Assembly (NCBI GenBank): GCA_002269645.1
Contig: NIVC01002411.1
Location: 263-64,262, forward strand
Direction of reading: 5' to 3'
Origin: Macrostomum lignano
Lineage: Eukaryota
Length of the DNA: 64,000 nt
Below are positions 8,104 to 56,283 of the stretch, one piece after another (position 1 is the stretch's first letter; the number at the start of each line of letters is the position of its first letter). The notes below the pieces were generated by a model. That model was not told the origin of the DNA. It did no database searches and saw nothing but the letters and a program-made list of their open reading frames with translations. The position numbers and the translations under genes were made by a program.

Positions 8104-8662
8104 TTAGACATCGGCGCTGAGCAGAGCGGACTCAAGCACCCGCTGCCTGCCGGGATGAATGGTGACCCATCGGGGCTCCAGCGGGTCGGCAGAATAGCCG
8201 TACACCACCAAGGAGCCACGGCAGACGGCCACAATCTCGCGCATGCAGTCCTCGTTGATCAGATCGGAGACCAGCAGGCGAAGGATTCGCAGAGCCGGCG
8301 CGAACACCCGACTGCGGCGCGGCAGCTCCAGCTCTTCGAAGTCTTCGTCTCCGCCGCTGGACTCGCCGTCGTCGTCTGAGTCGTCGTTGTCGTTGCCGAC
8401 GTAGGAGGAGTTCCCGTCCGGCGACCGTTCGCCACCGGCGCCACCGCAGGCGGCGGCAGCGACGGAGGCTCGTCGGCGCCATCTGGCTGCCCGCTCGGCC
8501 AGCCGCAGTCGCAGCAGGGCGAGAGTCCGGCGCCACGATGGCAGGTCGTGAATGATGGGCAGGAATGGCCGGCTGGTGATCTGCTTCAGGCCGCTGAAGT
8601 CCGCCTCCTGCAAGCTCGGACAGGCGGCCAGCACGGAGGAGACGCCGCGGTCTGTGACGAAC
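8104..8662 (-). CDS. LRR (FBXL/AMN1-type cysteine-containing LRR) protein, exon 3 (last)
   Basis: CGCAG acceptor at 8664-8663. Phase-2 join NP|FVTDRGVSSVLAACPSLQEADFSG continues the LRR of exon 2. TAA at 8104-8106. Confidence 0.8.
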
Positions 8663-9279
8663 CTGCGAGCGGGACGCGTTTTCTTAGAAACGGGATGGTC
8701 TACAGACATCTATGCAGCTTTCTAGTGTCCATAGATCTAAACGGCAGTATCTAGTGTCTATAGATCTAAATGGTGGTATCTAGTGTCTATAGATCTAAAC
8801 GGCAGTATCTAGTGTCTATAGATCTAAATGGTGGTATCTAGTGTCTATAGATCTAAACGGCAGTATCTAGTGTCTATAGATCTAAACAGCAGTATCTAGT
8901 GTCTATAGATCTAAACAGCAGTATCTAGTGTCTATAGATCTAAATGAGAGTATCTAGGGTCTATAGATCTAAATGAGAGTATCTAGGGTCTATAGATCTA
9001 AATGGTGGTATCTAGTGTCTATAGATCTAAATGGTGGTATCTAGTGTCTATAGATCTAAATGGTGGTATCTAGTGTCTATAGATCTAAATGGTGTTATCT
9101 AGTGTCTATAGATCTAAATGGTGGTATCTAGGGTCTATAAATCTAAATGAGGGTATCTAGTGTCTATAGATGTAAATAGTGGTATCTAGTGTCTATAGAT
9201 CTAGCTCGTAAATGAGAGTATCCAGTGTCTATAGATCTGTGAAGTGTACACTGCTTGCCTAACGGAGTGTACATCTTAA

Positions 9280-10512: not shown

Positions 10513-10764
10513 TTAAATGTCAGCATTTAGTGTCTAGATTTAAACGGTAGTATTCAGTCTCTATAGATCTAGACTGTGGAGACTTCTAGTGTGCATAGAT
10601 CAAAATTGTAGTGTCTAGTGTCTATAGATCTAAATGGTAGTAGCTTGTTTCAATAGATCTAAATGAGAGTATCCAGTGTCTATAGAACTAAATGGCAGTA
10701 TTTAGTGTCTATAGATCTAAATGGCAGTATCCAGTGCCTATAGATCTAAATGAGAGTATCCTGT

Positions 10765-12441
10765 TTACCAGCAGACTACGCTGGAACATACGTCCTCTGC
10801 AGCTCTACGGCAGAGATATTGCCTTCGCGCACCAGACCAGATGTCTCGGGGTCACACTTGACCACCGGCTCAACTGGTCCTTCCACGTGAAAGCAAAAGC
10901 CAAGCGTGCCTCAGCCATCCTGGCCCAGCTCCGACGAGCACTTGGCACTTCTTGGGGTCTATCCCCAAAGCGGCTTTGGTGGATCTATACTTCCGTAGTT
11001 AGACCTGCCATTACGTACGCCTCTGTTGTCTGGGTTAGCGCTACCCAGGTCAAAAGCCATGCAGACCTGCTCAACACGATCCAAGGCAGAGCGTGTAGGC
11101 TTATCTGCAACGCCACCAGGTCCACGCCCTTTGCTGGCATGGGGGCCTTCCTTAATCTACCGCCTCTTGACCTCTTCGTCAGGGGTGAGGCGGCTAGATC
11201 GACGCGGCGTCTAATTGATGCTGGCGTCAAATTCATTCACATGAGAGCACCTGCTAAGCGGAACCTTGTCCCGCATAGCGATCTGTGCCTCAACTTTCTC
11301 AACGAGTGTCAGGCCAATCGCGTCTTCACCGATGGCATTGCCTCAACGCTCAACCTGAGACAGCGCTACTCCGTAGCTATCGACTCGCGCGATAACATCA
11401 ATGACCAATGGAACCTTGGTGAGCTTCATTGCTACACCGACGGTTCTAAGCAGTCAGCCAACACCGGCTTTGGTGTTGGAATCTTTCTGAACGGGAGGGT
11501 CATCGCTACCCACGCTCAATACACTGGGGTCAACTCCAGTGTTTTCGAAAATGAAGTTCTGGCCATCAGCTCCTGCACTGCAGAGCTTCTCGCCACTGGC
11601 GTTATTGGCAAGAACATCATTTTCCATTCGGACAGCCAAGCTGCCTTGCACGCCATCAGTGGCTGCAGCACCAACTCTGCTACAGTCCTCGACTGTATCA
11701 AACTTCTTAACGTGTTGGGTTCCGCCAACAAAATTACCCTTAAGTGGGTTCCGGGGCATGTGGGGATCCGAGGAAATGAGCTGGCTGACACCCTTGCAAA
11801 AGTTGGTGCCTCCGGCTCCTCTCTCGGCCCCGAACCTCTTGTCCCGATTCCTGGCTGTGTCATCGACTCGCGCATCAAAGCGTGGATCAGGACTCAGCAC
11901 CGCTCGACTTGGGCGAACCGCACGAACTGCAGGCAATCCAGAGGCGCTGTCCCTCAGCCCTCTCACCAGCTCCGGAAGCTCCTCTTGCGCCTCTCGCGCA
12001 GAGACATCCGGGCTGCCACCATGACCCTCTCTGGTCACGGCTGCTTCTCCAGGCACCAGTACCTGCAGGGCAACGCCACCAACGCCACCTGTAGTTTCTG
12101 CAACTCAGGTGACGAAACCGCTGAGCATTTCGTCAGCATCTGTCCCGCCTTCACGCGGGCCAGACTCACTTACCTCGGGCCACACACATCTATTACTGAA
12201 GCGTGCAAACCCGAAAACTTTAATCAGCTCATGCGCTACCTTCGGGCCACCCGCAGGGCTGAACTCTCCTTTCCAGAGAGCACTATAGCTGCTGGCGACA
12301 CTGGGGGACCTCCCTGGGCGGCGCCAACCCTCCGTCCATAGCGACGCGTCGGCCGTTCAGGGATTTGCGGAATGGGCGCCCGCGCCTTCCCGCTGTGTCC
12401 CCTCCGGGACAGCCCTGCAGCTAAGTCAAGTAAGTCAAGTC
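10765..12441 (+). mobile_element. 5'-truncated non-LTR retrotransposon (LOA/Lian-like, I/R1 group): RT C-terminus, RNase H, CCHC finger
   Basis: CLGVTLD and WGLSPKRLWWIYTSVVRPAITY (RT thumb); YTDGS...E...SDSQAAL...KWVPGHVGIRGNELAD (RNase H); LSGHG and CSFC...ETAEH...CP (zinc finger). TSD ATCCTGT at 10758-10764 and 12442-12448; (TAAGTCAAG)2 tail. Confidence 0.92.
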
Positions 12442-13716
12442 ATCCTGTGTCTATAGATCTAAATGGCAGTATCTAGTGTCTATAGATCTAAATGAGAGTA
12501 TCCTGTGTCTATAGATCTAAATGGCAGTATCCAGTGTCTATAGATCTAAATGGCAGTATCTAGTGTCTATAGATCTAAATGAGAGTATCCTGTGTCTATA
12601 GATCTAAATGGCAGTATCCAGTGTCTATAGATCTAAATGGCAGTATTTAGTGTCTATAGATCTAAATGGCAGTATCCAGTGTCTATAGATCTAAATGATA
12701 GTATCCAGTGTCTATAGATCTAAATGGTAGTATCCAGTGTCTATAGATCTAAATGGCAGTATCCAGTGTCTATAGATCTAAATGGCAGTATCCAGTGTCT
12801 ATAGATCAAAATGATAGTATCCAGTGTCTATAGATCTAAATGGCAGTATTTAGTGTCTATAGATCTAAATGGCAGTATCCAGTGTCTATAGATCTAAATG
12901 ATAGTATCCAGTGTCTATAGATCTAAATGGTAGTATCCAGTGTCTATAGATCTAAATGGCAGTATCCAGTGTCTATAGATCTAAATGGCAGTATCCAGTG
13001 TCTATAGATCAAAATGATAGTATCCAGTGTCTATAGATCTAAACGGCAGTATCCAGTGCCTATAGATCTAAACGGCAGTATCCAGTATCTATAGATCTAA
13101 ATGATAGTATCCAGTGTCTATAGATCTAAATGATAGTATCCAGTGTCTATAGATCTAAACGGCAGTATCCAGTGTCTATAGATCTAAACGGCAGTATCCA
13201 GTGTCTATAGATCTAAACGGCAGTATCCAGTGTCTAAAGATTTAAAGGCAGTATCCAGTGTCTATAGATCTAAACGGCAGTATCTAGGGTCTATAGATCT
13301 AAACGGCAGTATCCAGTGTCTATTGATCTAAACGGCAGTATCCAGTGTCTATAGATTTAAAAGGCAGTATCCAGTGTCTATAGATCTAAACGGCAGTATC
13401 CAGTGTCTATAAATCTAAACGGCAGTATCCAGTGTCTATAGATCTAAACGGCAGTATCCAGTGTCTTCTATAGATCTAAACGGCAGTATCCAGTGTCTAT
13501 AGATCTAAACGGCAGTATCCAGTGTCTATAGATCTAAACGGCAGTATCCAGTGTCTTCTATAGATCTAAACGGCAGTATCCAGTGTCTATAGATCCAAAA
13601 GGCAGTATCCAGTGTCTATAGATCTAAATGGCAGTATCCAGTGTCTATAGATCTAAACGGCAGTATCCAATGTCTATAGACATTATACAACCGCTAACAA
13701 CAGACCGGCAACTCAC

Positions 13717-14647
13717 GGGTTGAAGCTGACGTCAAGCTTTACCAGCTGCTGCAAGTTGGCCGCCACGCTGAACATCAGCCGGTCGGTGACCAGTCGGGAG
13801 CCTTTGATGAAGGACAAATCCACCGATTCCAGTTTCCGACAACCGGAAATCACCGCCTCCAGGTCGGTGCCGTCGGCCAGGTTGCACCGGCAGGCGAAAT
13901 GGCGCAATTCCAGCAGCTCCGAGCCGATGGCGCGGCAAGCCTGCGGCGTCAGCCGGGGACACCAGTTCAGCGACAGGCAGCGCAGTCGGGTCAGCCGCAT
14001 CAGCGAGGCGAACAGCTGGCCAGCCTGCTCATCGGCGAGTTCTTCCCAGCCGTCAAGATGCAACGAGTGCAGCTGGTTGAGCTGGCCAAGGAATACCAGA
14101 TTGACTGGCTCAGTGAGCAGCAGCTCGCTGAGATCGAGGCCGCGCAGTTCGACAAGTCGGCAGAGCGGCTCGGCGATGCCAGCCAGCTGCAGGCGGCAGC
14201 AGCGCAAGTCCAGCCACACCAGGCCGGGGCAGAGGCTGCACACGGCGGCCAAGTCCGCCTCCGTGAGGCCATCAGAGCTGGCCAGACTCAGCGAGCGAAG
14301 GCAGCGGCCGCGCAGGGCGCAGAGCTGCAGCAGAGACTCCCGAGCTGAAGACCAGGCGGTGCAGAAGGCCAAGTCCAGCTCCGCCAGGCCCTGCTCTGCA
14401 TCCGGTTCTTCATCATCTGAGCCAGAGTCTTCTTCATCACTGTACTCATCTTCAGCTTCGTCGGCGCAGTCAATCAGCTGATCTTCATCATCTTTGGCGT
14501 CTTCGAAATTGTCTGCTTCAGAGTCGTCTGCAACGTCCGAGTCGGCGAGGCTGCTGGCGCTCTCGCTGGCGCAGCTGTGATAGCTGGAGCCTCCGGACTG
14601 CGGCTTCGGCTGCGCGCTGTCCGCTGCGGGTGGCGGATTTGGTGTTG
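13717..14647 (-). CDS. LRR protein exon 2: acidic linker plus second LRR block
   Basis: CCGCAG acceptor at 14649-14648. The phase-1 join is in frame with ORF 13713..14372 (LRSLSLASSDGLTE, LVWLDLRCC, LRCLSLNWCPRLT). CC|GTGAGT donor at 13716. Confidence 0.85.
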
Positions 14648-14654
14648 CTGCGGT

Positions 14655-15592
14655 AGCTAAGGGGGAAGCTAATAGGGTAGCTAATAGGGTAGTTAACGGA
14701 TAGCTAATGGGGTAGCTAATAGGGTAGTTAACGGGTAGCTAATGGGGCAGCTAATAGGGTAGTTAACGGGTAGCTAATGGGGTAGCTAATAGGGTAGCTA
14801 ATAGGGTAGTTAACGGGTAGCTAATGGGGAAGCTAATAGGGTAGCTAATAGGGTAGTTAACGGGTAGCTAATATGGTAGCTAATAGGGTAGTTAACGGGT
14901 AGCTAATGGGGCAGCTAATAGGGTAGTTAACGGGTAGCTAATGGGGTAGCTAATAGGGTAGTTAACGGGTAGCTAATGGGGCAGCTAATAGGGTAGTTAA
15001 CGGGTAGCTAATGGGGTAGCTAATAGGGTAGTTAACGGGTAGCTAATGGGGCAGCTAATAGGGTAGTTAACGGGTAGCTAATGGGGTAGCTAATAGGGTA
15101 GTTAACGGGTAGCTAATGGGGTAGCTAATAGGGTAGTTAACGGGTAGCTAAAGGGGTAGCTAATAGGGTAGTTAACGGGTAGCTAATGGGGTAGCTAATA
15201 GGGTAGTTAACGGGTAGCTACTGGCAACTAAGGGGCAGCTAATGGCAACTAAGGGGTAGCTAATAGGTAGCTAAGGGGAAAGCTAATAAGTCTATTATAG
15301 GGTAGCTAATGGGTAGCTAATGGTAACTAAGAGGTAGCTAATGGGTAGCTAATGGTAACTAAGAGGTAGCTAATGGGTTAGCTAATGGTAACTAAGGGGT
15401 GGCTAATGGGTAGCTAATGGTAACTAAGAGGTAGCTAATGGGTAGCTAATGGTAACTAAGGGGTAGCTAATGGGTAGCTAAGGGGGAAGCTAATGGGTAG
15501 CTAAGGGGGGAGCTAATAGGTAGCTAATGGGTAGCTATTGGTAACTAAGGGGTAGATAATGGGTAGCTAAGAGATAGCTAAATGGTAGCTTA
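14655..15592. repeat. 11/12-bp minisatellite (GGGTAGCTAAT / GGGTAGTTAAC) with 35-bp higher-order unit, filling intron 1 of the LRR gene
   Basis: Direct tandem repetition; three subunits form a 35-nt super-repeat. Confidence 0.95.
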
Positions 15593-15651: not shown

Positions 15652-16462
15652 CCTGTCTGTCCATCGCAATCGGCTCAGTCGCCCGCTCGTCTTCGCCGAC
15701 AGAAGTCGCCTCGGAAATCTCCGCCAAGCAGTCAAACAGCGGCCGGAGCTCCGCCAGATGCGTGGCCGTCAGCGAGCGCAGGTGCCGCCCAGCGAAGCGG
15801 CACAGATCCCGCAGGCCGGCCGCCGTCACCCGGGTGCCGCTGAGATTCACCCGACGAAGCCGGCCGCCGCCAGCTGGCAGGCTGGCGAATGCGGAGTCGC
15901 AGACCAGCGGACAGGCGGCGGCGGACAGGCGGCGGAGGCGGCGCCGGCCGGACAGCAGCACGCAGCGCAGGGCGGCGCCGGTAAGGCTGTCGCACTGGTC
16001 CAGCTCAAGGCAGCGCAGGCGGGGCGCCAGTCGGGGCAGGTCGGTCAGCAGGCGCTTGTCAAGCACCAGCTGGGAGCACTGAGCCAGGCGGAGTCGGCGA
16101 AGACCCGGACAGGCGGGCAGAGCGGCGCGCAGGTCGGCCGGGGCCAGCAGGCAGCAGGCGGTGAGGTCCAGCTCGGTCAGGCCGGGCCCGGCCGCCAAGT
16201 CGCGCAGGTGTCGGCCGCGCACGGCGCGGGGCTGCGCGGCGCTCAGATGGGCCAGCAGCTGTCCGGCCAGGCGCCAGTCCTCATTGTGCAGGCCGGGCGC
16301 CGAGGCGGCGCCGCGATGATCCCGAGCCTGGTCGGCGAGTTCGGCGAAGCACAGCGAGTACAGGCTGGGCGGCGGGGCTCGCGCCGTGGCGGCGGCGGCG
16401 GCAGCGGCGGCCGCATCAGCGAAGGAGTCGTCGTCTTCGTCTGAGTCACTGATGTCGGCCAT
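15652..16462 (-). CDS. LRR protein exon 1 (start MADISDSDEDDD; alternative ATG at 16516)
   Basis: LTELDLTACC, LRRLRLAQCSQL, LRCLELDQCDSLT, LRRVNLSGTRVT repeats; G|GTGAGT donor at 15651. Exons total 2301 nt = 767 codons. Confidence 0.82.
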
Positions 16463-16508
16463 GCGCGGCCAGCCGGACGCTGAAATGCGGGTTGCGATGG
16501 CGTGAAGC

Positions 16509-16522
16509 GTCTCCATGGCAAC
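16509..16522. promoter_or_regulatory. RFX X-box GTCTCCATGGCAAC
   Basis: Perfect match to the consensus GTHNYY-AT-RRNAAC, ~47 nt upstream of the MADISD start codon. Confidence 0.6.
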
Positions 16523-16549
16523 CGGGAAATTCAGCTGGAGACCCCATGG

Positions 16550-16855
16550 CCATGGCAACCAGGAGATACTCGGGTCGGTAATCGGGCACAGCATAACCAT
16601 GGCAACCAGGAGATACTCGGGTCGGTAATCGGGCACAGCATAACCATGGCAACCAGGAGATACTCGGGTCGGTAATCGGGCACAGCGTAACCATGGCAAC
16701 CAGGAGATACTCGGGTCGGTAATCGGGCACAGCATAACCATGGCAACCAGGAGATACTCGGGTCGGTAATCGGGCACAGCATAACCATGGCAACCAGGAG
16801 ATACTCGGGTCGGTAATCGGGCACAGCATAACCATGGCAACCAGGAGATACTCGG
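16550..16855. repeat. 47-bp minisatellite, each unit containing CCATGGCAAC
   Basis: CCATGGCAACC at 16550, 16597, 16644, 16691, 16738, 16785 and 16832 (47-nt period). Confidence 0.97.
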
Positions 16856-17779
16856 GGCAGTGACTGAGTGATCATGTGGGTGTTGAAATATCGTTGATTT
16901 TCACAAATAAAAAATAACATAACAAAGAAATATGAGATGATAATCAAAATGAATACTTTTATATTTGAATCAAAGCCAGATAAACAGAATTTACTCAAGC
17001 AATAAAAGAGAAAAATAGGAAAATTTAATGAATTCAAGCAAAATTTATACGCAATATTTAATGAGAGGCTAATGAGAGGCCTGGGAGGGCGATGCAATTT
17101 TCGAAACAAATCAACATCAGACCAGGCAGTCTAAAAACAGGTATCGCAAAATTTGCGGCAATCAATTATTAAAATTACATGGAAGAATTAAAACAAAATA
17201 AATGTGCGCAATATCCTTAGGAGAGAAAAAAAATTCCCTTACATAAAAAACTAGTTCGCATTCCTTCATTGAGGTAAGATTGAGAAGAAAGTATATATAA
17301 TATATAAAAGTTCTCAATAAAAACTTTTTCGTTCGATTCGCATGGAGAATCTACAATCGTCATAATTTTTCTTAAAACACAGAAAAAATTTAAGGTCACG
17401 AGAAAATTGAAACAAAAAATACAAATAATTAAAACAAAATACCCTACTTTTTCACGCGCAGTATTAATTTTTTTTAATCATCAAGCCGGAAGCGCAAATA
17501 TAAATTAGGAGAAAAATTCGAAAAAAGGTCGATTCATTTTCTCACTCATACCGAATTGTAATACATAATTGATAAAATTCTGAGCAATCAACTCGCCTTT
17601 GATTTCATCAATAATATCTGATATATTAGCAAAACAAAACAATAGTAACAGAATGCACATATTTACACAAATTCCAAAAGAACAGATTTTATTAACTTTA
17701 CAAGATTTCTGTTGCCATTGAACAGTACAAGAATCTCGTTTGTTTTACCTAACACGTGACTGCTACACATTTAGCTGAC

Positions 17780-18260
17780 GCTTGCTCTGTCTGTCGATCT
17801 ATCTAGACTACAGGTTGCTGTCTATAGATCTGTCTAGAATATTAGCTGCTTTGTCTATAGATCTATCTAGACAATAGGCTGCTCTGTCTGTAGATCTATC
17901 TAGACTATAGGTTGCTCTGTCTATAGATCTATCTAGACAATAGGCTGCTCTGTCTATAGATCTATCTAGACAATAGGCTTCTCTGTCTGTAGATCTAGCT
18001 AGACAATAGGCTTTTCTGTCTATAGATCTGTCTAGAATATTAGCTGCTCTGTCTGTAGATCTATCTAGACAATAGGCTGCTCTGTCTGTAGATCTGTCTA
18101 GAATATTAGCTGCTCTGTCTGTAGATCTATCTAGACAATAGGCTGCTCTGCCTATAGATCTATCTAGACTATAGGTTGCTCTGTCTGTAGATCTATCTAG
18201 ACTGGAATTTAATTTATCTATAGATCTATCTATAGTACAGGTTTTATAGATCTGTCTATT
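17780..18260. repeat. 33-bp minisatellite (TCTATAGATCTATCTAGACAATAGGCTGCTCTG)n
   Basis: Direct tandem repetition; source of spurious ORF 17808..18278. Confidence 0.93.
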
Positions 18261-20202
18261 TTTAAGGCTTATGTTCATTTTAATAGAAGCAATTTGGCTG
18301 AATAAGGGAAATATTGGGATAGACCATTTGTTAGTTCAATATAAAATTCGCAAGGCTTGATAAACTCTCATTTTTTATTTGCGTTTGTTAAGGGGTTGAA
18401 TTTTCAGTATCTATAGATCGATATTAGAGCACGCACTGTCTATAGATCTATATTAGATTTTCCATGGTCTATAGATTGAGATTATAGATCGCATTGTCTA
18501 TAGATCCAAATTCGATTTTCTACTGCCTATAGATAGAGATTGGAGCTTGCTACAATCTACATACCTAAGCTTCCATCTTCCATCTACCTATGCTAAAAGT
18601 TTCGGTTTTCAGCCATCAGAACGGGCAGCATTGAACTCGAATCTTTTTTAATTTTATTTCCTTGTCCCAATAAAACAGTAAAGAAGAAGACAACGCGCCT
18701 CTTAAAAAAGGAATTTTTCACCCATAATAAGAAAAAGGATATTTTTACAGCCAAAGAGGTAGCAGCTTAAACCGACAGAGACAGCTCAAGAAAAGAATGA
18801 TGAGTATTAGCTAAGCAAGAGCAAATAGTTGAGTGCGGCGAAGAGGTAGGCAATTAAAAAAACAGCGAATTTTCTTACTTTTTTACTGTAAGTAGTGCGA
18901 TTCGCAAAACAAATCAAGTTTAATGAATAAAAAACTAGTTGAGTCTGGAGAGCAAGAAAGCGGAGTTAAAGGAACTGGTTATTACAAAAAATTGTTGTTG
19001 CACTGGAAATGAACAAAAACAATACCTCACAACAGAAGACGCTAATAAAGAAATTGAAAACACAAAAGGGGCGGATTAACTTAAATCCCCCCTAGGGATT
19101 ATTTAGATCTGCAATAAACACAGACTGACTGCTTAATCCACCTGACGGTTTCTGATTGAAAAAAACTTATTTTATTATTCAATTGAAACAAAAACAAAGG
19201 TTATAGGAAAAACACTTAAAAAACAGCTCGGATTTCACTGACGGACTTTTTAAACAAACAGACGGAAAAACAACACGAGAAAAAAAGAGAAATAATCGAC
19301 AACATCCCTGAGTCGCGGGCTCAGTCAGATGTATACTTTGTCTAACATTTAAGCTGCTTTAGACTAAAAGACCAACTATATGTCATTGGTAACAGAGAGT
19401 AGAATTGCCAGACACAATGCAAACAGAAAAGTACATTTTGATCAACAACAGCAAGTATTATAATAATAATATATATATAAGTTAAGCTACGTAAAACGCG
19501 GGAAAAAAAACAAACAAAAAACACACAGACAGACTACTGAGAAATTTGCACAAAATATTAATGAGAAAAATATATATGCTTAGTGAGTAAAATCAATGAG
19601 TATTACAGGCGAAATTAGTAAGCACACTAATAGTATCAAGGTAGGCGGTTATAAAACGCCAAGATTCGCATTCTGAATTAATTAACTACTGCTAAGTAGT
19701 CAGTAGGAACTATTTCTCAGAGAAACAAGTGGCACACGTTCAGCTGCTGTACTAAAACCACAATAGCATTAACAACACACAATTCAATCCACAGAGCAAT
19801 GGCGGTGTGTCAGTCAGTTTAGAGGTTGGCAGTGTTCGGTTTTGATTAAGGACAGGATTAAACTACCGCAGTTCATAAGATTGTAAAAGGACGGTGAGCC
19901 TCGTTTCTTAGGAAAATGTTTTGAAGGCCGATGACGTAAACCGACAAATACACTATTTTCTATTAAGTCCTGGTTTCCAAAATAAAGTATATACAGAACG
20001 CGACATTCACGTTTCATGGAAAAAGTTTTGAAGGCCACTTTTCGCCGAAAAACACACTACGGAGATAGGAACTTTTCATTTTGTTCATATACTTCATATT
20101 TACTTTCAAAAAAAACAATTCTAAGAAACGAAGCTACCCCCTTCCAATTATCTACACTTTAGTAGTCCTTGGTTGGAGCCTGCTGGCGTAGTGATCCTTG
20201 GA

Positions 20203-27572: not shown

Positions 27573-28094
27573 TAGCTCAGAGTCGCTATAAAATTTTCTA
27601 CGTGTCAGATGGCTGCGCCACCAGCCTTCCTTTAGCTAAAAATTTGAGCTGTCAATTTTTGTGATTTAGCCGCCCGTGTCGACTGCTGCATAAGCCTGAT
27701 GACTATTGAGGAGCCATATTGAAAAAAAATTGGCTCAAAACTCCCAGCACAGCACTTGAGAATGGATAAATAGGCAGTAGCAGGTAGCAACAGGTGCCAA
27801 CCTGAAGCCAAACAATGGCAGTAGCACCGAGTTGAGGGGAAGGAATTGGTGTTTGGGATAGAATTCTCCGTGCCAAATGGACCGATAATTCACTAGATGA
27901 GCAGTTCTCAGACAGAAAGAAATTTCAGTTGTTTAACAATACTATTTTGTAAGATTTTCTCCATAGGCGATGCCAAGTCCTTAACACTGTTTAATAAGAG
28001 TTCTCTCGCTAAGTTATAAAACTTGAAAACTTTTACCCATTTTATTCATTTTTCTCTAACTTGTCAATGTTATCATGTTATCATTGTCAATGCA

Positions 28095-28672
28095 CACCTG
28101 AATATTCAGTGGGTCATGTAGGCAGGCTACCTACCTGCCTACTGCACGCCTGAGTATTCAGTGGATCATGTGGTTACCTACCTGCCTACTGCACGCCTGA
28201 GTATTCAGTGGATCATGTGGTTACCTACCTGCCTACTGCACACCTGAGTATTCAGTGGATCATGTGGTTACCTACCTGCCTACTGCACGCCTGAGTATTC
28301 AGTGGATCATGTGGTTACCTACCTGCCTACTGCACGCCTGAGTATTCAGTGGATCATGTGGTTACCTACCTGCCTACTGCACGCCTGAGTATTCAGTGGA
28401 TCATGTGGTTACCTATCTGCCTACTGCACACCTGAGTATTCAGTGGATCATGTGGTTACCTACCTGCCTACTGCACACCTGAGTATTCAGTGGATCATGT
28501 GGCTACCTACCTGCCTACTGCACACCTGAGTATTCAGTGGATCATGTGGTTACCTATCTGCCTACTGCACACCTGAGTATTCAGTGGATCATGTGGTTAC
28601 CTACCTGCCTACTGCACACCTGAGTATTCAGTGGATCATGTGGTTACCTACCTGCCTACTGCACGCCTGAAT
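28095..28672. repeat. 47-bp minisatellite (GAGTATTCAGTGGATCATGTGGTTACCTACCTGCCTACTGCACGCCT)n
   Basis: About 12 contiguous units with no spacers. Confidence 0.97.
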
Positions 28673-29109
28673 TATTCAAACTAAATTCCATAAACATTCA
28701 ATGAACTGAATATCCACTGACCAGCTATTACCTGCACTCATTGTTAACACTATAAAAATGCTAATAGATGACAAAGCATGAAGCTATATACCCGCCCATT
28801 GACAGCATTTTAATGGGTGCAGTTTGCTAAAACTACCAAAAAACTATCGTAAAAAAAGCGCGCAAGATGCGGGTTAGATTAATGAGAAGAGGAGAGGGGA
28901 AAGATGAGAACAGGACGGTTGATAGTTATAACTGGTTCCCAACCCCATCCAATATCCATAAGCAAATATAGCAATAAAATCGCCAATAAAATACACAAGA
29001 GTCGTAATTCAGCAGTGTTTTTGCCGCGACAACCGATTGTAAGCTGTCATAAAGCAGCCCTAATAACGGAATGCTTTCACAAACTTAAAAGTTACTAATT
29101 TATAGTTTA

Positions 29110-37594: not shown

Positions 37595-40258
37595 ATATCA
37601 GGGAGAATCAGAGAGAGATATCAGGGAGAATCAGAGAGAGATATCAGGGAGAATCAGAGAGAGATATCAGGGAGAATCAGAGAGAGATATCAGGGAGAAT
37701 CAGAGAGAGATATCAGGGAGAATCAGAGAGAGAGATATCAGGGAGAATCAGAGAGAGATATCAGGGAGAATCAGAGAGAGATATCAGGGAGAATCAGGGA
37801 GAATCAGAGAGAATCAGAGAGATATCAGGGAGAATCAGAGAGAGATATCAGGGAGAATCAGAGAGATATCAGGGAGAATCAGAGAGATATCAGGGAGAAT
37901 CAGGGAGAATCAGGGAAAATCAGGGAGAATCAGAATCAGAGAGAGATATCAGGGAGAATCAAAGAGAATCAGTGAGAATCAAGGAGAATCAGAGAGAATC
38001 AGAGAGAATCGGGGAGAATCAGGGAGAATCAGGGAAAATCAGAGAGATATCAGGGAGAATCAAAGAGAATCAGTGAGAATCAAGGAGAATCAGGGAGAAT
38101 CAGAGAGAATCGGGGAGAATCAGGGAGAATCAGGGAAAATCAGGGAGAATCAGAATCAGAGAGAGATATCAGGGAGAATCAAAGAGAATCAGTGAGAATC
38201 AAGGAGAATCAGAGAGAATCAGAGAGAATCGGGGAGAATCAGGGAGAATCAGAGAGATATCAGGGAGAATCAGAGAGATATCAGGGAGAATCAGGGAGAA
38301 TCAGAGAGAATCGGGGAGAATCAGAGATATCAGTGAGAATTAGACAGAATCGGGGAGAATCAGAGATATCAGGGAGAATTAAGGAAAATCAGCGAGGGAT
38401 ATCAGTGAGAATCAAAGAGAATCAGTGAGAATCAAGGAGAATCAAGGAGAATCAAGGAGAATCAAGGAGAATCAAGGAGAATCAAGGAGAATCAAGGAGA
38501 ATCAAGGAGAATCAAGGAGAATCAGAGAGAATCAGGGAGAATCAGAGAGATATCAGGGAGAATCAAGGAGAGATATTAGGGAGAATCAGGGAGAATCAGG
38601 GAAAATCAGGGAGAATCGGGGAGAATCAGAGAGAATCAGGGAGAATCAAGGAAAATCAGGGAGAATCAGGGAGAGATATCAGGGAGAATCAGGGAGAATC
38701 AGAGAGAATCAGAGAGATATCAGGGAGAATCAGGGAGAATCAAAGAGAATCAAAGAGAGATATTAGGGAGAATCAGGGAGAATCAGGGAAAATCAGGGAG
38801 AATCGGGGAGAATCAGAGAGAATCAGGGAGAATCAAGGAAAATCAGGGAGAATCAGAGAGAGATATCAGGGAGAATCAGGGAGAATCAGAGAGAATCAGA
38901 GAGATATCCGGGAGAATCAGGGAGAATCAGGGAGAATCAGAGAGAATCAGAGAGATATCAGGGAGAATCAGGGAGAATCAGAGAGAATCAGAGAGATATC
39001 AGGGAGAATCAGAGAGAATCAGGGAGAGATATCAGGGAGAATCAGGGAGAATCAGAAAGAATCAGAGAGAATCAGGGAGAGATATCAGGGAGAATCAGGG
39101 AGAATCAGAGAGAATCAGGGAGAGATATCAGGGAGAATCAGAGAGAATCAGGGAGAATCAGAGAGAATCAGGGAGAATCAGAGAGAATCAGGGAGAGATA
39201 TCAGGGAGAATCAGAGAGATATCAGAGAGATATCAGAGAGAATCAGGGAGAATCAGAGAGAATCAGAGAGATATCAGAGAGAATCAGGGAGAATCAGAGA
39301 GAATCAGAGAGAATCAGGGAGAGATATCAGGGAGAATCAGGGAGAATCAGTGAGAATCAGAGAGAATCAGGGAGAGATATCAGGGAGAATCAGAGAGATA
39401 TCAGAGAGATATCAGAGAGAATCAGGGAGAATCAGAGAGAATCAAGGAGAGATATTAGGGAGAATCAGGGAGAATCAGGGAAAATCAGGGAGAATCGGGG
39501 AGAATCAGAGAGAATCAGGGAGAATCAAGGAAAATCAGGGAGAATCAGGGAGAGATATCAGGGAGAATCAGGGAGAATCAGAGAGAATCAGAGAGATATC
39601 AGGGAGAATCAGGGAGAATCAAAGAGAATCAAAGAGAGATATTAGGGAGAATCAGGGAGAATCAGGGAAAATCAGGGAGAATCGGGGAGAATCAGAGAGA
39701 ATCAGGGAGAATCAAGGAAAATCAGGGAGAATCAGAGAGAGATATCAGGGAGAATCAGGGAGAATCAGAGAGAATCAGAGAGATATCCGGGAGAATCAGG
39801 GAGAATCAGAGAGAATCAGAGAGATATCAGGGAGAATCAGGGAGAATCAGAGAGAATCAGAGAGATATCAGGGAGAATCAGAGAGAATCAGAGAGAATCA
39901 GGGAGAGATATCAGGGAGAATCAGAGAGAATCAGGGAGAATCAGAGAGAATCAGGGAGAGATATCAGGGAGAATCAGAGAGATATCAGAGAGATATCAGA
40001 GAGAATCAGGGAGAATCAGAGAGAATCAGAGAGATATCAGAGAGAATCAGGGAGAATCAGAGAGAATCAGAGAGAATCAGGGAGAGATATCAGGGAGAAT
40101 CAGGGAGAATCAGAGAGAATCAGGGAGAGATATCAGGGAGAATCAGAGAGAATCAGGGAGAATCAGAGAGAATCAGGGAGAATCAGAGAGAATCAGGGAG
40201 AATCAGAGAGAATCAGGGAGAATCAGGGGGAATCAGAGAGAATCAGGGAGAATCAGAA
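37595..40258. repeat. 10-bp purine-rich minisatellite (GAGAATCAGG / GAGATATCAG)n
   Basis: 2.7-kb array ending ~30 nt from the E78 exon 1 donor. Confidence 0.97.
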
Positions 40259-40290
40259 CAAAACATCTGAAAGCAAGGCCTGAAACTGAC

Positions 40291-41274
40291 CAGCGAGCAG
40301 TGCCGGGTGCCAGGCAGCTGGGCCAGTCGGACATCGCAGTAGGCGCTGGCCGCCCGAAACGCCTGATGAACGGAAGCGGCCAGTTGGCGCTGACTGGCGT
40401 CTTCGTCTGGGTCCGGCTTGCGCGGCTGGTGTTGGAGCTGCTGCTGAAGCTGGTGCCGGGGCTGGTGCTGCTGCTGATAGTGCTGCTGCGGATGCTGATA
40501 GCCCTGCTGACAAGTTGGCGGCCGAAGCAGCTGCTGTTGAAACTGTGGCGGCGGCGGCGGCGCCTCAACGATCCCAGCAGGCCGAGTCGCCGGAGCGGCC
40601 GCGGGCGTCGACGTTGGAGCTGACGAGGCCGACGCCGCGGTGGCCGTCGTAGTTGTGGACACTCGGCCGTAGCGCACGGAGTCCTTGGACATGCCGGCCG
40701 ACAGGCACTTTCGGAATCTGCAGTGCTGGCAGCGATTGCGATTGACTCGAATGACGGGACATCGGCCGTCGCGCAGGCATTTGTACTGAATCTGCTTCTG
40801 TATGCTGCGCCTAAAGAAGCCTTTGCAGCCTTCGCAGGAGATCACGCCGTAGTGATAGCCGCTGGCCTTGTCGCCGCACACTTTGCACGGCGTGAAGGAG
40901 CCGCCGCTGCCGCCGCCGTTGCCATTGGTAACGCTGCCGATGTCGGGATCAGGCTGTCGGTGACTGACTCTCTGCTGCTGATCCGGGTGCTTCTGGATGC
41001 ATTGATAAGCGGCTGGTGGGACGGCGTGCAGCGCCGGCTGCGGCTGGTGAGGCGGCGGCGGCGGCGGTGGCGGCGGCGCAGGCGGTGGAGGCGCCTGCCG
41101 TCGGCACAGAGGAATCAGCGCTGCCAGCGGCGAAGTAGTCGGAGGCGGCGCTGCGGATGCCGATTCGGACGCCGCCGATGTTGATACCGCCGACGAGATT
41201 GAAGCCGTTGCCATGTGAGCCGCGGCAGCTGCGGCCTGGTGATGAGGATGGTGATGATGGTAGTCCCAGCTCAT
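40291..41274 (-). CDS. E78: Nuclear receptor E78 (NR1E1, Eip78C orthologue) exon 1: A/B region, C4 zinc-finger DBD, hinge
   Basis: [76 protein letters not shown] is nearly identical to the E78 DBD. CTG|GTCAGT donor at 40290 (phase 0). Three exons total 1761 nt = 587 codons. Confidence 0.92.
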
Positions 41275-41530
41275 AGTAGTGGTTGCTGCTACTAGAAGAC
41301 TCGGCAGTCCGTCAACGGCCGCGGCCTCGGCTGTTGGGACCAAATGGCGGGCATTGTTGGCGGCCAGTTGCCAACTGGAAAAGTATTCGGATTGATAATA
41401 AGATTCTGGAGCCTTCTAGTCTAGGTTGCTGTAGATGGAAGTTCAGAAAAAATATATCAAATCAAATTTAAAAGCAAATCGAACAGCCGCATACCTTGGG
41501 AGAATTGCTGTTTAAATAAAAAAGAGTTTT

Positions 41531-51965: not shown

Positions 51966-54900
51966 ATGGAACTGCGACAAAAGGCTGCCCTAATGGCACT
52001 GAAGGGTGCGCTGGTTCGAGATGTCAATTTTCACGACATCGAAGATTCTCTGTTAAGCTTTGGTCTCATTTCCCCTGAGGAGAAGCAGATAATTAACAGA
52101 GCTGGAAGTACAGATAGACAGACTAGCACATTGGTGGATATTCTTGTGGACAAAAATGATGTGAGAACATTCGACTGTCTCATTTCAAGTCTAGAACCTA
52201 CTTACGATTTTCTGTCAAGGAGTTGGCTAATTTCCGTGAAAACCGCAAATTTATCTGACTAAGTCAACTAAAGATTACGAAGGCGTCTTCATCGAAGGTG
52301 GTATTCCTATCACTCCAGTGGGTAACATTGAGCTTAAGTACGTGGCAGAACTCAAGGAAAGCTTGGTAAAGCTATCGGTCCGCTCTGATGGGGGCTGGAT
52401 TCTCGTGAAAGGCCACGGCGGTGCTGGAAAGTCGGTAGTTGTTTCTCAAGCAATAAGAGGCAAGGCCTCTGACGGAAGTCCAATTGCCTCCTATTTTTTC
52501 AATCGAGTATTTTGGTTCACAATAGGCAACCTGCGCACCGACGAATTGGAGTCGATGCTCCTGGCTAAGATGCAGAACATTTGCATCCGTTTGGATCCTA
52601 CGCTGCGCGCGTCGCCTCCAACAAGCCTTGATGACGCAAAAAATTTGTTTCGCAAAATCATGCTAGAAAAGTACCCGTGCGGACTTATCGTTCTAGATGA
52701 CGTTTGGGAGCCAAAAATTTTGCGCTATTTCAATGTTCAAGCAAGAATCGTTGTTACATCAAGAAAGGCCGATATTTTCAGCAAAATTCAGCCTGGAGAT
52801 GCGCAGCGATGCATGAAAATCTCCGTTGATGAAGGTTTACCCGAAGAATTGACTTCTAAGCTTCTTACTAAGATTATCAACAGCGAAGTTTCACCTGGTC
52901 AAGTCTCTGATTCGTTCAACGATGAAGACATGGAGCGTGTTCGAAGGCTTCATTCCAAGTGCAAAGGAAATCCTTTTATTGTTTCCATCTTCGGTGGCCT
53001 TCTTCGTGGCCGACTCTCTCAATTCGAGAGATATTTGAAAAAGTTTAAAACTGATCTTTTTAAGAAAGTCGACTTAGAGCTGGGTGATTATGAGTATGGA
53101 AGCATCATAGATGCCATTCTAGTTAGTATTGACGATCTAGATGAAGAGCAAAAGGAACGGTATCTTCACTTGTCTATTTTTCCTGAGGACACTTTTTTAT
53201 CTGCGCGATTTCTTTCAACATATTGTTGGCGAGACGAAGATGGCAACCCACTGTCTGTGGATGACTCTTTAGATGTGATGGAAGGTTTGTTCGTCGTTCT
53301 ATTGCCACGATAGAGAAGTACCGGCCGAATGAAGAGCTCCTTACTCTTCATGACTTAATTGTGAGTGCTATGAAAAGTGAGTACAAAGAAAAACAAACGA
53401 GCTTCAACAATCAGTTTGTCGAAAGAGTGCTCAGCCATCGGGAAACGATGGGTAGTTGGATGGATGTTGACAGCAACGATCAAATACACTATTTGGCCTA
53501 CAATTTTGTCTACCACTTAGTCGGTTCTGATGCAGTTCTGCTAGACAGAAAGTTAAGTATCCTGCGTGACTTCGACTTTATTTCGTGGCTTTGCTGTCGG
53601 ATTGGTGCCGAGAACCTGACGTTTGTTTACCAGTATTCCATTAAGATCCTTATGATTGACGAGTCAGCAAGGAAAAGCTTGACAGACTTCGTCGAATTTT
53701 TCCGATCGCCGATTCTTCACATTCAGGCAACCAATTTGGCTACTAGGCGATCTGACTCGGCCGTGATTCAACTGGCTCTCACTCTACCAGATGAGAACTC
53801 TGTTCGCGAGTGTGCCGTGGAGGCTGCTAAAAAGCATAGACAGTTTTTCTGCTTTTACTATTGGCTTAATGTCGACCAGACGGAAGAGCAGATCTACAAT
53901 ACATTCAAAGTTGACAGCGATGTTTCTACATTCGCTCTAGATCGTGATTGTAAGCACGCTGTTGTTGCAAGCGATTCATCTGCAGTTGTTTTAGACCTAA
54001 AAACGGGTTTACGCAACTTCCGTGTCCGCAAAGAGGACATGGCCTGCAGCAGTGCTCGAGGCGATGCACAGGACAGCATTCAAATTGTTTCTGCTCTCTT
54101 CAGTCCTGACAATCAGTCACTGTTAGTCCTGACTGAATTCGCATTGTTTCGCTTCAAACTGCCTCCTAGTGCTTTTGAAGTGGGTATTCGACCTTCCCCA
54201 GCTGCGCCTTTACCTTCTGAAAAGGGGAGCTTGCATTTTCCTCAAGGCCGGCCCAGATCTGGCACAACTGAAAAATCCCCGCTAGAACTCACTCCAAACA
54301 AACCGGTCTACAAAGAGGAGGACAAGAGAATTCTTTTTTTACTGCCATGTGCTTTGAGTCGGACGCCAAGCTTCTGGTTGGAAGCAGTGACGGAAATATC
54401 AAGGTGTTTACCTTGGCTGATCGAGTGACCAACCTAAGCTCCGAATTCGACATAGATCAGAATATTCCAGCAGGCGCACAGTCCCAGATTAACCACATTG
54501 CAGCTTCACAATCAATGTATTCAACTTCAATTGCCGTCTCTGGTCCAAATGACTGTGTTTACGTCTACAAAAGTCGTTTTGACATTAAGAAGTACTCGGG
54601 ACACACTAAGAATTCGAATCCCATTCGCTGCGCTTTTGAGCCACGTCCTGAGCCGCGATTTGCGCATCGATTGCAAACAACGAAATTCATCTTTGGCACC
54701 CGAAACTCAACAAATGTTAGTCCGTGAATTTGGACCAAAGAGCACATCCTTTACGAGCATTGCAATCAGTAGTGAAGGTGTTTATATAGCTGTTGGCACT
54801 AGCACACGAGCGCACATTTATCTCTACAGGGTGGAGAATCTGACTGAGTCATCCTGCAGGCTGCAGCTAGTAGACGAGTTAAATGGCTCAGGTAGCATTA

Positions 54901-56283
54901 CTAAGTGTCTGGCTTTTCAAACTTCGGAAAGTCATTCTTATATTCAATTTCCGAGATGTCAACCGAAGGTGTTCTTACTTGCTGGCAGACCAGTCTCAGT
55001 ACCACACCTTTTTACGCTGATGATCAGCGTAGTAGCTCTATTTTTTTCGGACCGGAAAATGCTACTCTTCGACTGCGAACTGTGATTGATGCTGTCAATG
55101 TCAATGGCGAGATTGTTGTCGCTTGCCAATCAGTCCGAAGATCTCTGCTTATTCTTAAGTCAAGCGGCAATCACTTGCAAAATGACGAAAGCGGCAAGCT
55201 AAGTGGAAAAGAACACCCATTTTCAAAGGCCGCTGCTATTCGTATTGCTCCTACTGGAAACTACGCCGTCTTTACTTTCTCCAATGAAGTTGTTATCGCA
55301 AAAAGATTCAACGATGTCTGGACATTCGATTTCAAACCCATCAATGTTGAAATTGTTGACATTGTCTTTCTGCCCAACTGTCAAGGTTTCATCGGATCGA
55401 ACAGAAGCAACAAGCTTGTTGAGTTTCACGATTCTTTGTGCGTCAAACAAGTAGATTTGTCTCATAAGCAACTCTATTCTATTGATTCAGTTCAGCCACC
55501 TGCCAATGTCGCCGCTCTATTGTTGTTTGATCGTGGCTGGAACTACTTATTGCCCGATTCTCTGTGCGTCAATGAGAATTTCGGAGGCTCTATTGGCGAT
55601 CAACTTCAAGAAAGCCTACTGTGCTGTAACTTTTGTCCCGCTCTTAGTGGTTTCGTTGCCGGCGGAACAGACCTAGGCAATTTGATTCTCTGGAAGGTGG
55701 CAGCTGATAATACGGCTAGCATTTGGCAACGCGCAGCCGAATAGAGGATGAATCCCGCAATTGTTCACTGCGCTGCTTACAGTTTTCGCATCAGATTATC
55801 CAGGACTGTTACCTGTTGGCTGCCGCCTTTGACGACGATCGGTTCTCATTGTGGGCCCTACGAGATGGCCATCTGATCGATTTGGTAAATTGTCAGCCTG
55901 TGCAAATCGGCCTCCCACAGCAGCCAAGCAATATCGGCTGCATTGCTTGGACTATGCACACAGATGAGGATGGGACGCGTCACCACAAGCTAATCATAGC
56001 GTCAGACTGTGTGCACGTGTGCTGCCTGCCCGAGCAGGAAATCCTCGGCGCGGCGAGATTAGCGCCGCAGACACCAAACTTGAAGCTTGGCACGGTGTCC
56101 TTGTACTCGCGTCAGAGTGTCAGCAAAGTTCACGTGCTCAACAATGGCCAAGATCTGCTGTTTGTTGATAATTCTCACACCGTATTTTGGATGCGCACTT
56201 TGCACTCGGAAGATGGAGCTGGACCGGCTAGACAGGAGTGTTCGGTGCCATTGATTCCCTTCGGTGAATCCCAAGAAGTGTGA
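51966..56283 (+). CDS. APAF1: Apoptotic protease-activating factor 1 (CARD, NB-ARC, WD40), intronless, 8 apparent single-base frameshifts
   Basis: CARD (51966-52220); EGGIP, GHGGAGKS Walker A, LIVLDDVW Walker B, LHDL (MHD-like) and WD40 repeats. Adding one base at each of ~52217, 52240, 53287, 54335, 54664, 54702, 54908 and 55728 gives one 4326-nt ORF (1441 aa) with no nonsense codons. Confidence 0.9.

What the first reader, a model, noticed from the sequence alone, without database searches (positions are those of the whole stretch)
16509..16855. Minisatellite that multiplies RFX X-box motifs immediately upstream of an LRR gene
Seen: a perfect X-box (GTCTCCATGGCAAC, 16509-16522) lies ~47 nt upstream of the likely start codon. 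It is followed by a 47-bp tandem array whose 7 units each carry CCATGGCAAC. The copy at 16687-16700 (GTAACCATGGCAAC) is a full consensus match; most others (ATAACCATGGCAAC) keep one perfect half-site. Established: RFX factors bind X-boxes in proximal promoters of ciliary genes, and FBXL13/DRC6 is a ciliary LRR protein. Inference: tandem amplification created a copy-number-variable homotypic RFX site cluster that could tune a ciliary gene in a multiciliated animal.
Basis: partly seen in the sequence, partly recalled or inferred. Interest (0 to 1): 0.78.

Follow-up and report, generated by a model that had tools for sequence, protein, structure and literature searches.

The report
Ordinary promoter minisatellite carrying X-box-like motifs
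A young, copy-number-variable 47-bp minisatellite carrying RFX-like (X-box) motifs sits just upstream of an uncharacterised leucine-rich-repeat gene of the flatworm Macrostomum lignano, but a third of this window is such repeats and nothing links the gene to cilia, so it is most likely a neutral repeat.

Summary
The sequence observation is correct. The window is Macrostomum lignano contig NIVC01002411.1. A 47-bp array of 6.5 units (99% identical) lies at 16550-16856, 88-394 nt upstream of the minus-strand ATG at 16462. Every unit carries CCATGGCAAC. Only the unit at 16687 fits the strict X-box consensus. The "perfect" site at 16509 fits only the looser nematode consensus, and it lies inside a diverged partial copy of the repeat unit. 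All eight motif copies are therefore one sequence by descent.

Copy number really varies: the three assembled gene copies carry 6.5, 6.5 and 2.5 units. That is normal here. Twenty-seven minisatellites cover 33% of the window, and 12 of 15 comparable arrays differ in length between copies.

The gene encodes a 758-aa cysteine-type LRR protein with no F-box. Its closest relatives are uncharacterised invertebrate proteins. Orthology to FBXL13/DRC6 and a ciliary role are both unsupported. Six homologue loci have no X-box near their annotated starts.

A consensus spliced-leader acceptor (TTTCAG) lies 17 nt upstream of the ATG, and one annotated transcript begins exactly there. The transcription start site is unknown.

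Most likely this is a neutral slippage product. A real RFX site remains possible, at about 20-25%.

The parts
16550..16856 (.). 47-bp minisatellite of 6.5 units, spanning -88 to -394 from the ATG. Plus-strand unit: CCATGGCAACCAGGAGATACTCGGGTCGGTAATCGGGCACAGCATAA.
   Evidence: TRF. Sequence. The unit occurs nowhere else in the window. There are 6.5 units in L002 and 2.5 in L001.
16505..16529 (.). Diverged partial copy of the repeat unit in the proximal flank. It contains the X-box-like site.
   Evidence: 20/25 identity to the unit; 0 of 300 shuffles scored as well.
16509..16522 (.). X-box-like site GTCTCCATGGCAAC, at -47 to -60 from the ATG. It fits GTHNYYATRRNAAC and has one mismatch to GTNRCCNNRGYAAC.
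   Evidence: Identical in all three assembled gene copies.
16546..16559 (.). Array-edge site ATGGCCATGGCAAC, with one mismatch to the strict consensus.
16687..16700 (.). The only unit with a strict X-box match (GTAACCATGGCAAC). An A-to-G variant in unit 4 creates it.
   Evidence: The same variant is present in L002 and absent from the 2.5-unit L001 copy.
16480..16485 (-). TTTCAG, which fits the M. lignano spliced-leader trans-splice acceptor motif [T/C]TNCAG. It lies 17 nt upstream of the ATG.
   Evidence: Sequence. Motif from PMC8629364. The annotated protein of the L002 copy starts SGWPRM, so its transcript model begins directly after this CAG.
16460..16462 (-). Start codon of the LRR gene (BOX15_Mlig018667g2).
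15652..16462 (-). Coding exon 1: an acidic/Ala-rich N-terminus followed by the first LRR block.
   Evidence: GTGAGT donor. My 758-aa model is 100% identical to annotated protein P0002.
13717..14623 (-). Coding exon 2: an acidic stretch followed by the second LRR block. It is paralogous to exon 1 (29.5% identity).
8104..8662 (-). Coding exon 3, the C-terminal part, including the stop codon.
14652..15590 (.). Minisatellite with an 11-12-bp base unit (also scored by TRF at periods 23, 35 and 70), filling intron 1. It is 939 bp here and in L002, and 530 bp in L001.
16956..16963 (-). TATAAAAG in the AT-rich stretch about 100 nt distal to the array. This is a possible core promoter if the array lies in an outron. 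It is read by eye only.
   Evidence: Sequence only. Not tested.

Best explanation
The array is a young, unstable minisatellite. Replication slippage or unequal exchange most likely produced it in the 5'-flanking DNA of a Macrostomum lignano LRR gene. It is one of 27 such arrays in this window.

The sequence that expanded already contained an X-box-like 10-mer, and a decayed partial copy of it survives at 16505-16529. Amplification copied the motif passively. Each unit therefore carries a good RFX half-site plus spacer (GTTGCCATGG on the gene strand). One unit became a full consensus match through a single base change.

The array does not belong to the mature mRNA. It sits either upstream of the transcription start site or in an outron that SL trans-splicing removes at the TTTCAG 17 nt before the ATG. 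The difference in copy number between gene copies (6.5 versus 2.5 units) reflects the general instability of arrays in this genome, not selection for RFX dosage.

Shown: the array, its descent, its copy-number variation, the base rate of arrays, the gene model and the lack of an F-box.

Inferred: neutrality, the slippage mechanism and the trans-splicing.
For: 1. Base rate. Arrays of period >= 7 and length >= 100 bp cover 33% of the window and 47% of its first 42 kb, 27 arrays in all. The published genome is 15% simple and tandem repeats (PMC5730564).

2. Copy-number variation is the norm. Twelve of 15 arrays shared with L001/L002 differ in length between copies.

3. The array is young: units are 99% identical.

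4. All motif copies share descent.

5. Multiplied RFX half-sites are not special. Four of the 27 arrays multiply GTTRCY.

6. Nothing ties the gene to cilia. There is no F-box, the relatives are uncharacterised, and the solved-structure search returned only FBXL2, FBXL17 and SKP2.

7. None of six homologue loci has an exact X-box near its annotated start.

8. Exact X-box matches also occur by chance in GC-rich coding exons of this window.

9. The array carries about 15 ATGs in a GCCATGG context on the gene strand, and no annotated transcript includes it. It is therefore not part of a mature 5'UTR.
Against: This array is the only one of the 27 that comes within one mismatch of a full X-box; the next best array is two mismatches away and the rest three or more.

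The proximal site fits the C. elegans consensus and lies 47-60 nt from the ATG. That is the kind of position functional X-boxes occupy in nematodes (own knowledge).

CCATGGCAAC matches, base for base, 10 of the 14 positions of the optimal RFX palindrome GTTGCCATGGCAAC (own knowledge of published RFX motifs).

RFX-motif enrichment at ciliary promoters is reported for a planarian.

Neutrality is inferred from base rates. It was not measured.
Confidence: 0.6

Rival explanations
1. The proximal X-box-like site at 16509, and with it the array units, is a genuine RFX target. The LRR gene then belongs to the ciliary programme. Unit number (4 versus 8 motif copies, counting the proximal site) would change RFX occupancy and expression.
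For: The site fits the consensus 47-60 nt from the ATG. Each unit holds a perfect monomer site, GTTGCC, which matches GTTRCY as defined in the paper read. This is the only array near a full X-box. Planarian cilia-module promoters are enriched for the RFX motif. Copy number varies between copies. An unplanned count found 5 exact X-box sites in 121 kb of homologue loci, against 0.5 in Markov simulations.
Against: No evidence shows that the gene is ciliary. In the pre-specified test, none of six homologue loci had an exact X-box within -1000..+100 of the annotated start. Of the five homologue-locus sites, two are in coding exons, two in introns and one lies beyond the gene. Most units lack the G of the second half-site. 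The 47-bp spacing puts neighbouring sites on opposite faces of the helix (inference). The transcription start site is unknown and the gene is probably trans-spliced.
Confidence: 0.22
2. The array is transcribed as part of an outron and acts at the RNA level. Alternatively, it binds a factor other than RFX. In either case it affects trans-splicing efficiency or promoter strength without RFX.
For: A TTTCAG acceptor lies at -17, and a transcript model starts exactly after it. A TATA-like TATAAAAG lies about 100 nt distal to the array. Many upstream ATGs would be harmless only if they were removed from the mRNA.
Against: No read-level evidence is available here. The two other transcript models start 6 nt further downstream, not at an AG. 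No Rfam family matches anywhere in the window.
Confidence: 0.1
3. The array is coding. It would be either an N-terminal extension of the LRR protein or a remnant of an LRR exon.
For: All three gene-strand frames are open across the array. One frame reads LCPITDPSISWL, which resembles the C..ITD..L core of cysteine-type LRRs.
Against: A 47-bp period is not a multiple of 3, and the 188-bp length difference between copies shifts the frame. All annotated proteins start at or after -17. BLAST similarity to LRR proteins (E >= 0.4) is no better than for the control frames. Pfam finds no LRR. With about 47 codons per cycle, open frames are expected in roughly 10% of cases by chance (own estimate).
Confidence: 0.02

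Closest known systems
X-box promoter motif bound by RFX/DAF-19 in ciliary genes (C. elegans xbx genes, Drosophila, vertebrates; motif enrichment reported in planarian cilia modules)
   Same: A 14-bp imperfect palindrome with a 2-nt spacer. It lies within 100 nt of the start codon. It has a perfect GTTGCC half-site and the ATGG centre typical of strong sites.
   Different: Known functional X-boxes are single conserved sites in front of genes with ciliary expression. Here, binding, expression and conservation are all untested. Most copies lack the second half-site G, and the copies arose by tandem duplication.
Promoter minisatellites or VNTRs that alter expression (human INS VNTR, MAOA-uVNTR; unstable promoter tandem repeats in yeast) - own knowledge
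   Same: Head-to-tail units of tens of bp in 5'-flanking DNA, with a copy number that differs between gene copies.
   Different: Those cases have measured links between expression and copy number. None exists here, and the surrounding DNA is saturated with comparable arrays.
The general tandem-repeat load of the Macrostomum lignano genome (15% simple and tandem repeats; PMC5730564)
   Same: Same size class, the same instability between duplicated copies, and the same intergenic or intronic location as the 26 other arrays in the window.
   Different: It is the only array here whose unit approaches a full X-box. It is also among the shortest and most homogeneous arrays.
FBXL-type cysteine-containing LRR proteins (FBXL2, FBXL17, SKP2; FBXL13/DRC6; AMN1)
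   Same: LRR_6-type repeats. The best solved-structure matches are FBXL2 and FBXL17.
   Different: No F-box. The protein has two LRR blocks, each preceded by an acidic stretch. Its nearest relatives are F-box-less, uncharacterised proteins of molluscs, brachiopods, annelids, echinoderms, hemichordates and amphioxus.

Membership tests
X-box (RFX binding site) | Sequence fits GTNRCC N0-3 RGYAAC (strict) or GTHNYYATRRNAAC (nematode) | tested here: met
   Strict consensus: 16687 only. Nematode consensus: 16509 and 16687. All other units have one mismatch.
X-box (RFX binding site) | Lies in the proximal promoter, within about 250 bp of the start codon or transcription start site | tested here: inconclusive
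   The site is at -47 to -60 and the array at -88 to -394 from the ATG. The transcription start site is unknown. A probable SL acceptor at -17 means the site may lie in an outron.
X-box (RFX binding site) | Bound by an RFX protein, with expression dependent on RFX | not testable with these tools
   No binding or expression data could be reached. The gene identifiers appear in no paper searched.
X-box (RFX binding site) | The downstream gene has a ciliary function or expression pattern | tested here: not met
   No homology to a known ciliary protein was found. Absence of evidence only.
X-box (RFX binding site) | The site is conserved in orthologous promoters | tested here: not met
   None of six homologue loci has an exact X-box within -1000..+100 of the annotated CDS start. 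Orthology and the true 5' ends are uncertain. The three M. lignano copies are too similar (97-100%) to be informative.
Minisatellite / VNTR | Head-to-tail repeats with a unit of 10-100 bp | tested here: met
   Period 47, 6.5 copies, 99% identity.
Minisatellite / VNTR | Copy number differs between alleles or copies | tested here: met
   6.5 units in the window, 6.5 in L002 and 2.5 in L001. These are assembled copies from one inbred line. Population data were not available.
FBXL13 / DRC6 | N-terminal F-box domain | tested here: not met
   No F-box hit in Pfam at E <= 0.1 for the 758-aa protein. None at E <= 0.001 in ten nearest relatives.
FBXL13 / DRC6 | Cysteine-containing (LRR_6-type) leucine-rich repeats | tested here: met
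   LRR_6, E = 1.3e-6. FBXL2 and FBXL17 are the best solved-structure matches.
FBXL13 / DRC6 | Orthology: closest characterised relative is FBXL13/DRC6 | tested here: inconclusive
   Of 20 top relatives, one carries an automatic 'FBXL13-like' name. The others are named FBXL15-like, FBXL2-like or uncharacterised. That 'FBXL13-like' protein hits only FBXL2, FBXL17 and RAD7 among solved structures. No phylogeny was made.
SL trans-spliced gene of M. lignano | [quoted passage not shown] | tested here: met
   TTTCAG at 16485-16480. Motif from PMC8629364. One transcript model starts right after it.
SL trans-spliced gene of M. lignano | Reads carrying the 35-nt spliced leader joined at that site | not testable with these tools
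   No read data were available.

The most novel reading that the evidence does not exclude
The array is a natural dosage series of RFX sites: four motif copies in one gene copy and eight in two others, counting the proximal site. It stands in front of an uncharacterised LRR gene that would then be a new ciliary component shared with marine invertebrates. This would be the first VNTR-type homotypic X-box cluster. It could be tested directly by transgenesis in M. lignano.
Probability: 0.1. Interest if true: 0.55.

Novelty: new member of a known kind. Interest (0 to 1): 0.25.

Why it matters
If the array did bind RFX, it would show how an unstable repeat can change the number of activator sites at a promoter. 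M. lignano would be a good place to test this, because reporter transgenes and RNAi are routine there. The test would also point to a new ciliary LRR protein.

As it stands, the main value is cautionary. In this genome a third of the local DNA is minisatellite and most arrays vary in length. A repeat that happens to multiply a transcription-factor-like motif is therefore expected now and then. Such a repeat should not be read as regulatory without binding or expression data.

Tried and rejected
1. N-terminal coding extension or LRR-exon origin of the array. Rejected.

2. Kinship with the other 47-bp array at 28091-28678. Alignment score 5; 7 of 200 shuffles scored as well. Not convincing.

3. 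Dispersed copies of the unit. None elsewhere in the window. The rest of the M. lignano genome could not be searched.

4. Known RNA families. No match in the window.

5. Cross-species footprinting. Two word-indexed protein searches returned only the M. lignano paralogue P0001. No promoter from another Macrostomum species was available.

6. Expression data for Mlig018667, Mlig030326 and Mlig014984. Not found in the paper library or in the supplements of PMC5816591.

7. X-boxes near the starts of six homologue genes. None found.

8. The excess of exact X-box sites inside those homologue loci. Their positions are heterogeneous: two in coding exons, two in introns and one downstream of the gene. 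I do not count this as support.

9. Operon membership. The upstream nuclear-receptor gene ends about 3.7 kb away. That exceeds the 1-kb repeat-adjusted threshold used for M. lignano operons.

Full report
**Source and gene.**
The window is Macrostomum lignano DNA: contig NIVC01002411.1 of assembly GCA_002269645.1, with an offset of 262. The gene next to the finding lies on the minus strand. I built a three-exon model from open frames and canonical splice sites:
- exon 1, 16462-15652;
- exon 2, 14623-13717;
- exon 3, 8662-8104.

The 758-aa product is 100% identical to the annotated protein BOX15_Mlig018667g2 (P0002, 761 aa). Two further near-identical copies exist in the same assembly. Mlig030326g1 lies on NIVC01002993.1 (L002), and Mlig014984g3 lies on NIVC01002912.1 (L001). 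The published assembly is known to be redundant, with 180 Mb in blocks at least 95% identical (PMC5730564).

**The observation.**
TRF finds a 47-bp array at 16550-16856 with 6.5 copies, 99% matches and no indels. CCATGGCAAC occurs eight times, at 16513 and in seven array units.

Against the strict consensus GTNRCCNNRGYAAC, only 16687-16700 matches. That consensus is quoted in the paper read. Against the nematode consensus GTHNYYATRRNAAC, both 16509-16522 and 16687 match. The other units and the array-edge copy have one mismatch each.

Relative to the A of the ATG (16462), the 16509 site spans -47 to -60 and the array spans -88 to -394. "Perfect" holds only for the looser consensus.

**Independence of the copies.**
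The proximal flank at 16505-16529 aligns 20/25 with the repeat unit, and none of 300 shuffles scored as well. The "separate" X-box is therefore a decayed partial copy of the unit, or the seed from which the array grew. The eight motif copies count as one event.

When spacers of 0-3 nt are allowed, the window holds two more exact X-box matches. Both lie inside GC-rich coding exons. One is at 5591, in a 591-aa ORF. The other is at 40918, just before the zinc-finger domain of a nuclear-receptor gene. Chance matches therefore occur in GC-rich M. lignano sequence more often than whole-window shuffles suggest.

**Base rate of arrays.**
Arrays with period >= 7 and length >= 100 bp number 27. They cover 33% of the window and 47% of its first 42 kb. 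The published genome is 15% simple and tandem repeats.

Fifteen arrays lie in the region shared with L001 or L002, and 12 of them differ in length in at least one copy. The 47-bp array has 6.5 units in the window and in L002, including the same A-to-G variant in unit 4. It has 2.5 units in L001. Copy-number variation is real but ordinary here.

Four of the 27 arrays multiply the RFX monomer site GTTRCY. Only this array comes within one mismatch of a full X-box.

**The gene product.**
Pfam finds only LRR_6-type repeats and no F-box. The best solved-structure matches are FBXL2, FBXL17 and SKP2, with E from 8e-9 to 8.5e-3.

An exhaustive profile search found no relative above 37% identity outside Macrostomum. 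The top twenty named relatives come from bivalves, limpets, Lingula, Capitella, a crinoid, a sea urchin, hemichordates and amphioxus. One Balamuthia protein matches only the first LRR block. Source names are "uncharacterized", "FBXL15-like", "FBXL2-like" and, once, "FBXL13-like". None of the ten scanned has an F-box. The "FBXL13-like" scallop protein itself hits only FBXL2, FBXL17 and RAD7 among solved structures.

FBXL13/DRC6 membership therefore fails on the F-box test, and orthology is not shown. I found no expression data for any of the three gene identifiers.

**Transcript geometry.**
TTTCAG at 16485-16480 on the gene strand fits the M. lignano SL trans-splice acceptor motif [T/C]TNCAG (PMC8629364). 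The annotated protein of the L002 copy begins SGWPRM. That is exactly the reading expected if its transcript model starts directly after this CAG.

The two other models begin six nucleotides further downstream, reading WPRM. I read this as probable SL trans-splicing at -17. This is an inference, at roughly two chances in three.

The transcription start site is not known. The array carries about 15 ATGs in a GCCATGG context on the gene strand, and no model includes it. It is therefore either promoter DNA or outron. The upstream nuclear-receptor gene ends about 3.7 kb away, which is beyond the operon threshold of 1 kb.

**Comparative test.**
No promoter from another Macrostomum species could be reached. 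Instead I fetched six homologue loci: Lingula, Capitella, Ylistrum, Anneissia, Saccoglossus and Patella. I asked whether an X-box lies within -1000..+100 of the annotated CDS start. None of the six has an exact match. One has a one-mismatch match, which is the background rate.

An unplanned count found five exact sites in the 121 kb, against 0.5 in first-order Markov simulations; 0 of 200 simulations reached five. Two of the five lie in coding exons, two in Patella introns and one downstream of the Anneissia gene. I record this but do not treat it as support.

**Weighing the evidence.**
For a real RFX site:
- the fit to the consensus;
- the position close to the ATG;
- the exact match of CCATGGCAAC to 10 of the 14 positions of the optimal RFX palindrome (own knowledge);
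- the uniqueness of this array among the 27;
- the report that promoters of planarian cilia-module genes are enriched for the RFX motif (PMC12660999).

Against:
- no link between the gene and cilia;
- no X-box at the homologue promoters;
- chance matches in GC-rich sequence nearby;
- the common descent of all copies;
- a degenerate second half-site in most units.

I put a neutral minisatellite at about 0.6 and a functional RFX site or cluster at about 0.2-0.25. The remainder goes to other roles, either at the RNA level or through another factor.

**Other readings tried.**
A coding origin for the array was examined because one frame reads LCPITDPSISWL. Similarity to LRR proteins is no better than for control frames, and Pfam finds nothing. 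Kinship with the 47-bp array at 28091 is weak. No Rfam family matches in the window.

**Handling note.**
The L001 gene copy is interrupted by a retrovirus-like LTR element. I give only its coordinates. I did not extract or align its sequence.

Noticed in passing
L001 11559-16186 (LTRs at 11559-11858 and 15887-16186): The gene copy with the short 2.5-unit array is disrupted. A 4.6-kb LTR retroelement sits inside exon 2. It has two identical 300-nt LTRs and a 1340-aa gag-pol-like ORF on the opposite strand. The annotated protein P0001 (Mlig014984g3) is therefore a chimera that splices from the broken exon 2 into the next gene downstream.
   Followed up: partly
window 8721-9203, 10514-10761, 12442-13680; also 17783-18203 and 18410-18545: A recurring minisatellite family. 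Three arrays share a 29-bp unit with a TCTATAGATC core. A 33-bp and a 58-bp relative lie upstream of the gene. Two of the 29-bp arrays flank a plus-strand retroelement-like ORF (10692-12341; Pfam RNase_H, E = 6.6e-11) in intron 2, as if the element had inserted into one array.
   Followed up: partly
window 1-42000 versus 42001-64000: Minisatellite coverage is very uneven: 47% of the first 42 kb against 7% of the remainder.
   Followed up: no
window 40918-40932 (minus-strand gene, ORF 40246-41415): An exact palindromic X-box match (GTTGCCATTGGTAAC, 3-nt spacer) lies inside the coding exon of a nuclear-receptor gene (Pfam zf-C4, E = 7e-32). It encodes VTNGN just before the zinc-finger domain. 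Another exact match, at 5591, lies in the 591-aa ORF.
   Followed up: partly
L006 12699; L007 14976; L008 7439; L009 7550 and 11534: Homologue loci from a scallop, a crinoid, a hemichordate and a limpet hold 5 exact X-box sites in 121 kb, against 0.5 in Markov simulations. The two Patella sites are intronic and are near-perfect palindromes (GTTGCCAGTGGCAAC and GTTGCCTAGCAAC). No empirical genome background was available for calibration.
   Followed up: partly
window 16462-15652 versus 14623-13717: Exons 1 and 2 encode paralogous modules, each an acidic stretch followed by a cysteine-type LRR block. They share 29.5% identity over about 270 aligned columns. This points to an internal duplication of the gene.
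   Followed up: no
window exon 3 (about 8530-8570) versus L002: The two otherwise identical proteins differ over 11 residues: PIIHDLPSWRRT in the window and PSFTTCHRGRRT in L002. This pattern is typical of two compensating frameshifts. They may be real, or they may be long-read assembly errors.
   Followed up: no
window 28091-28678: A second array also has a 47-bp period (12.4 copies). It multiplies a GTTRCY half-site 10 times. Its similarity to the 16550 unit is only marginal (7 of 200 shuffles scored as well).
   Followed up: yes
window 52240-56280 (+): An APAF-1-like gene with NB-ARC (E = 1e-17), APAF1_C (E = 2e-5) and an IFT140-type beta-propeller hit well below the Pfam cut-off (E = 2.4e-3, 17.1 bits against 27). 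It is unrelated to the finding.
   Followed up: no
window 16479 onward (minus strand): If the 35-nt spliced leader, which ends in ATG, is joined at 16479, its ATG is out of frame with the gene's own ATG. It would open an overlapping reading frame of about 80 codons that ends at 16243.
   Followed up: no
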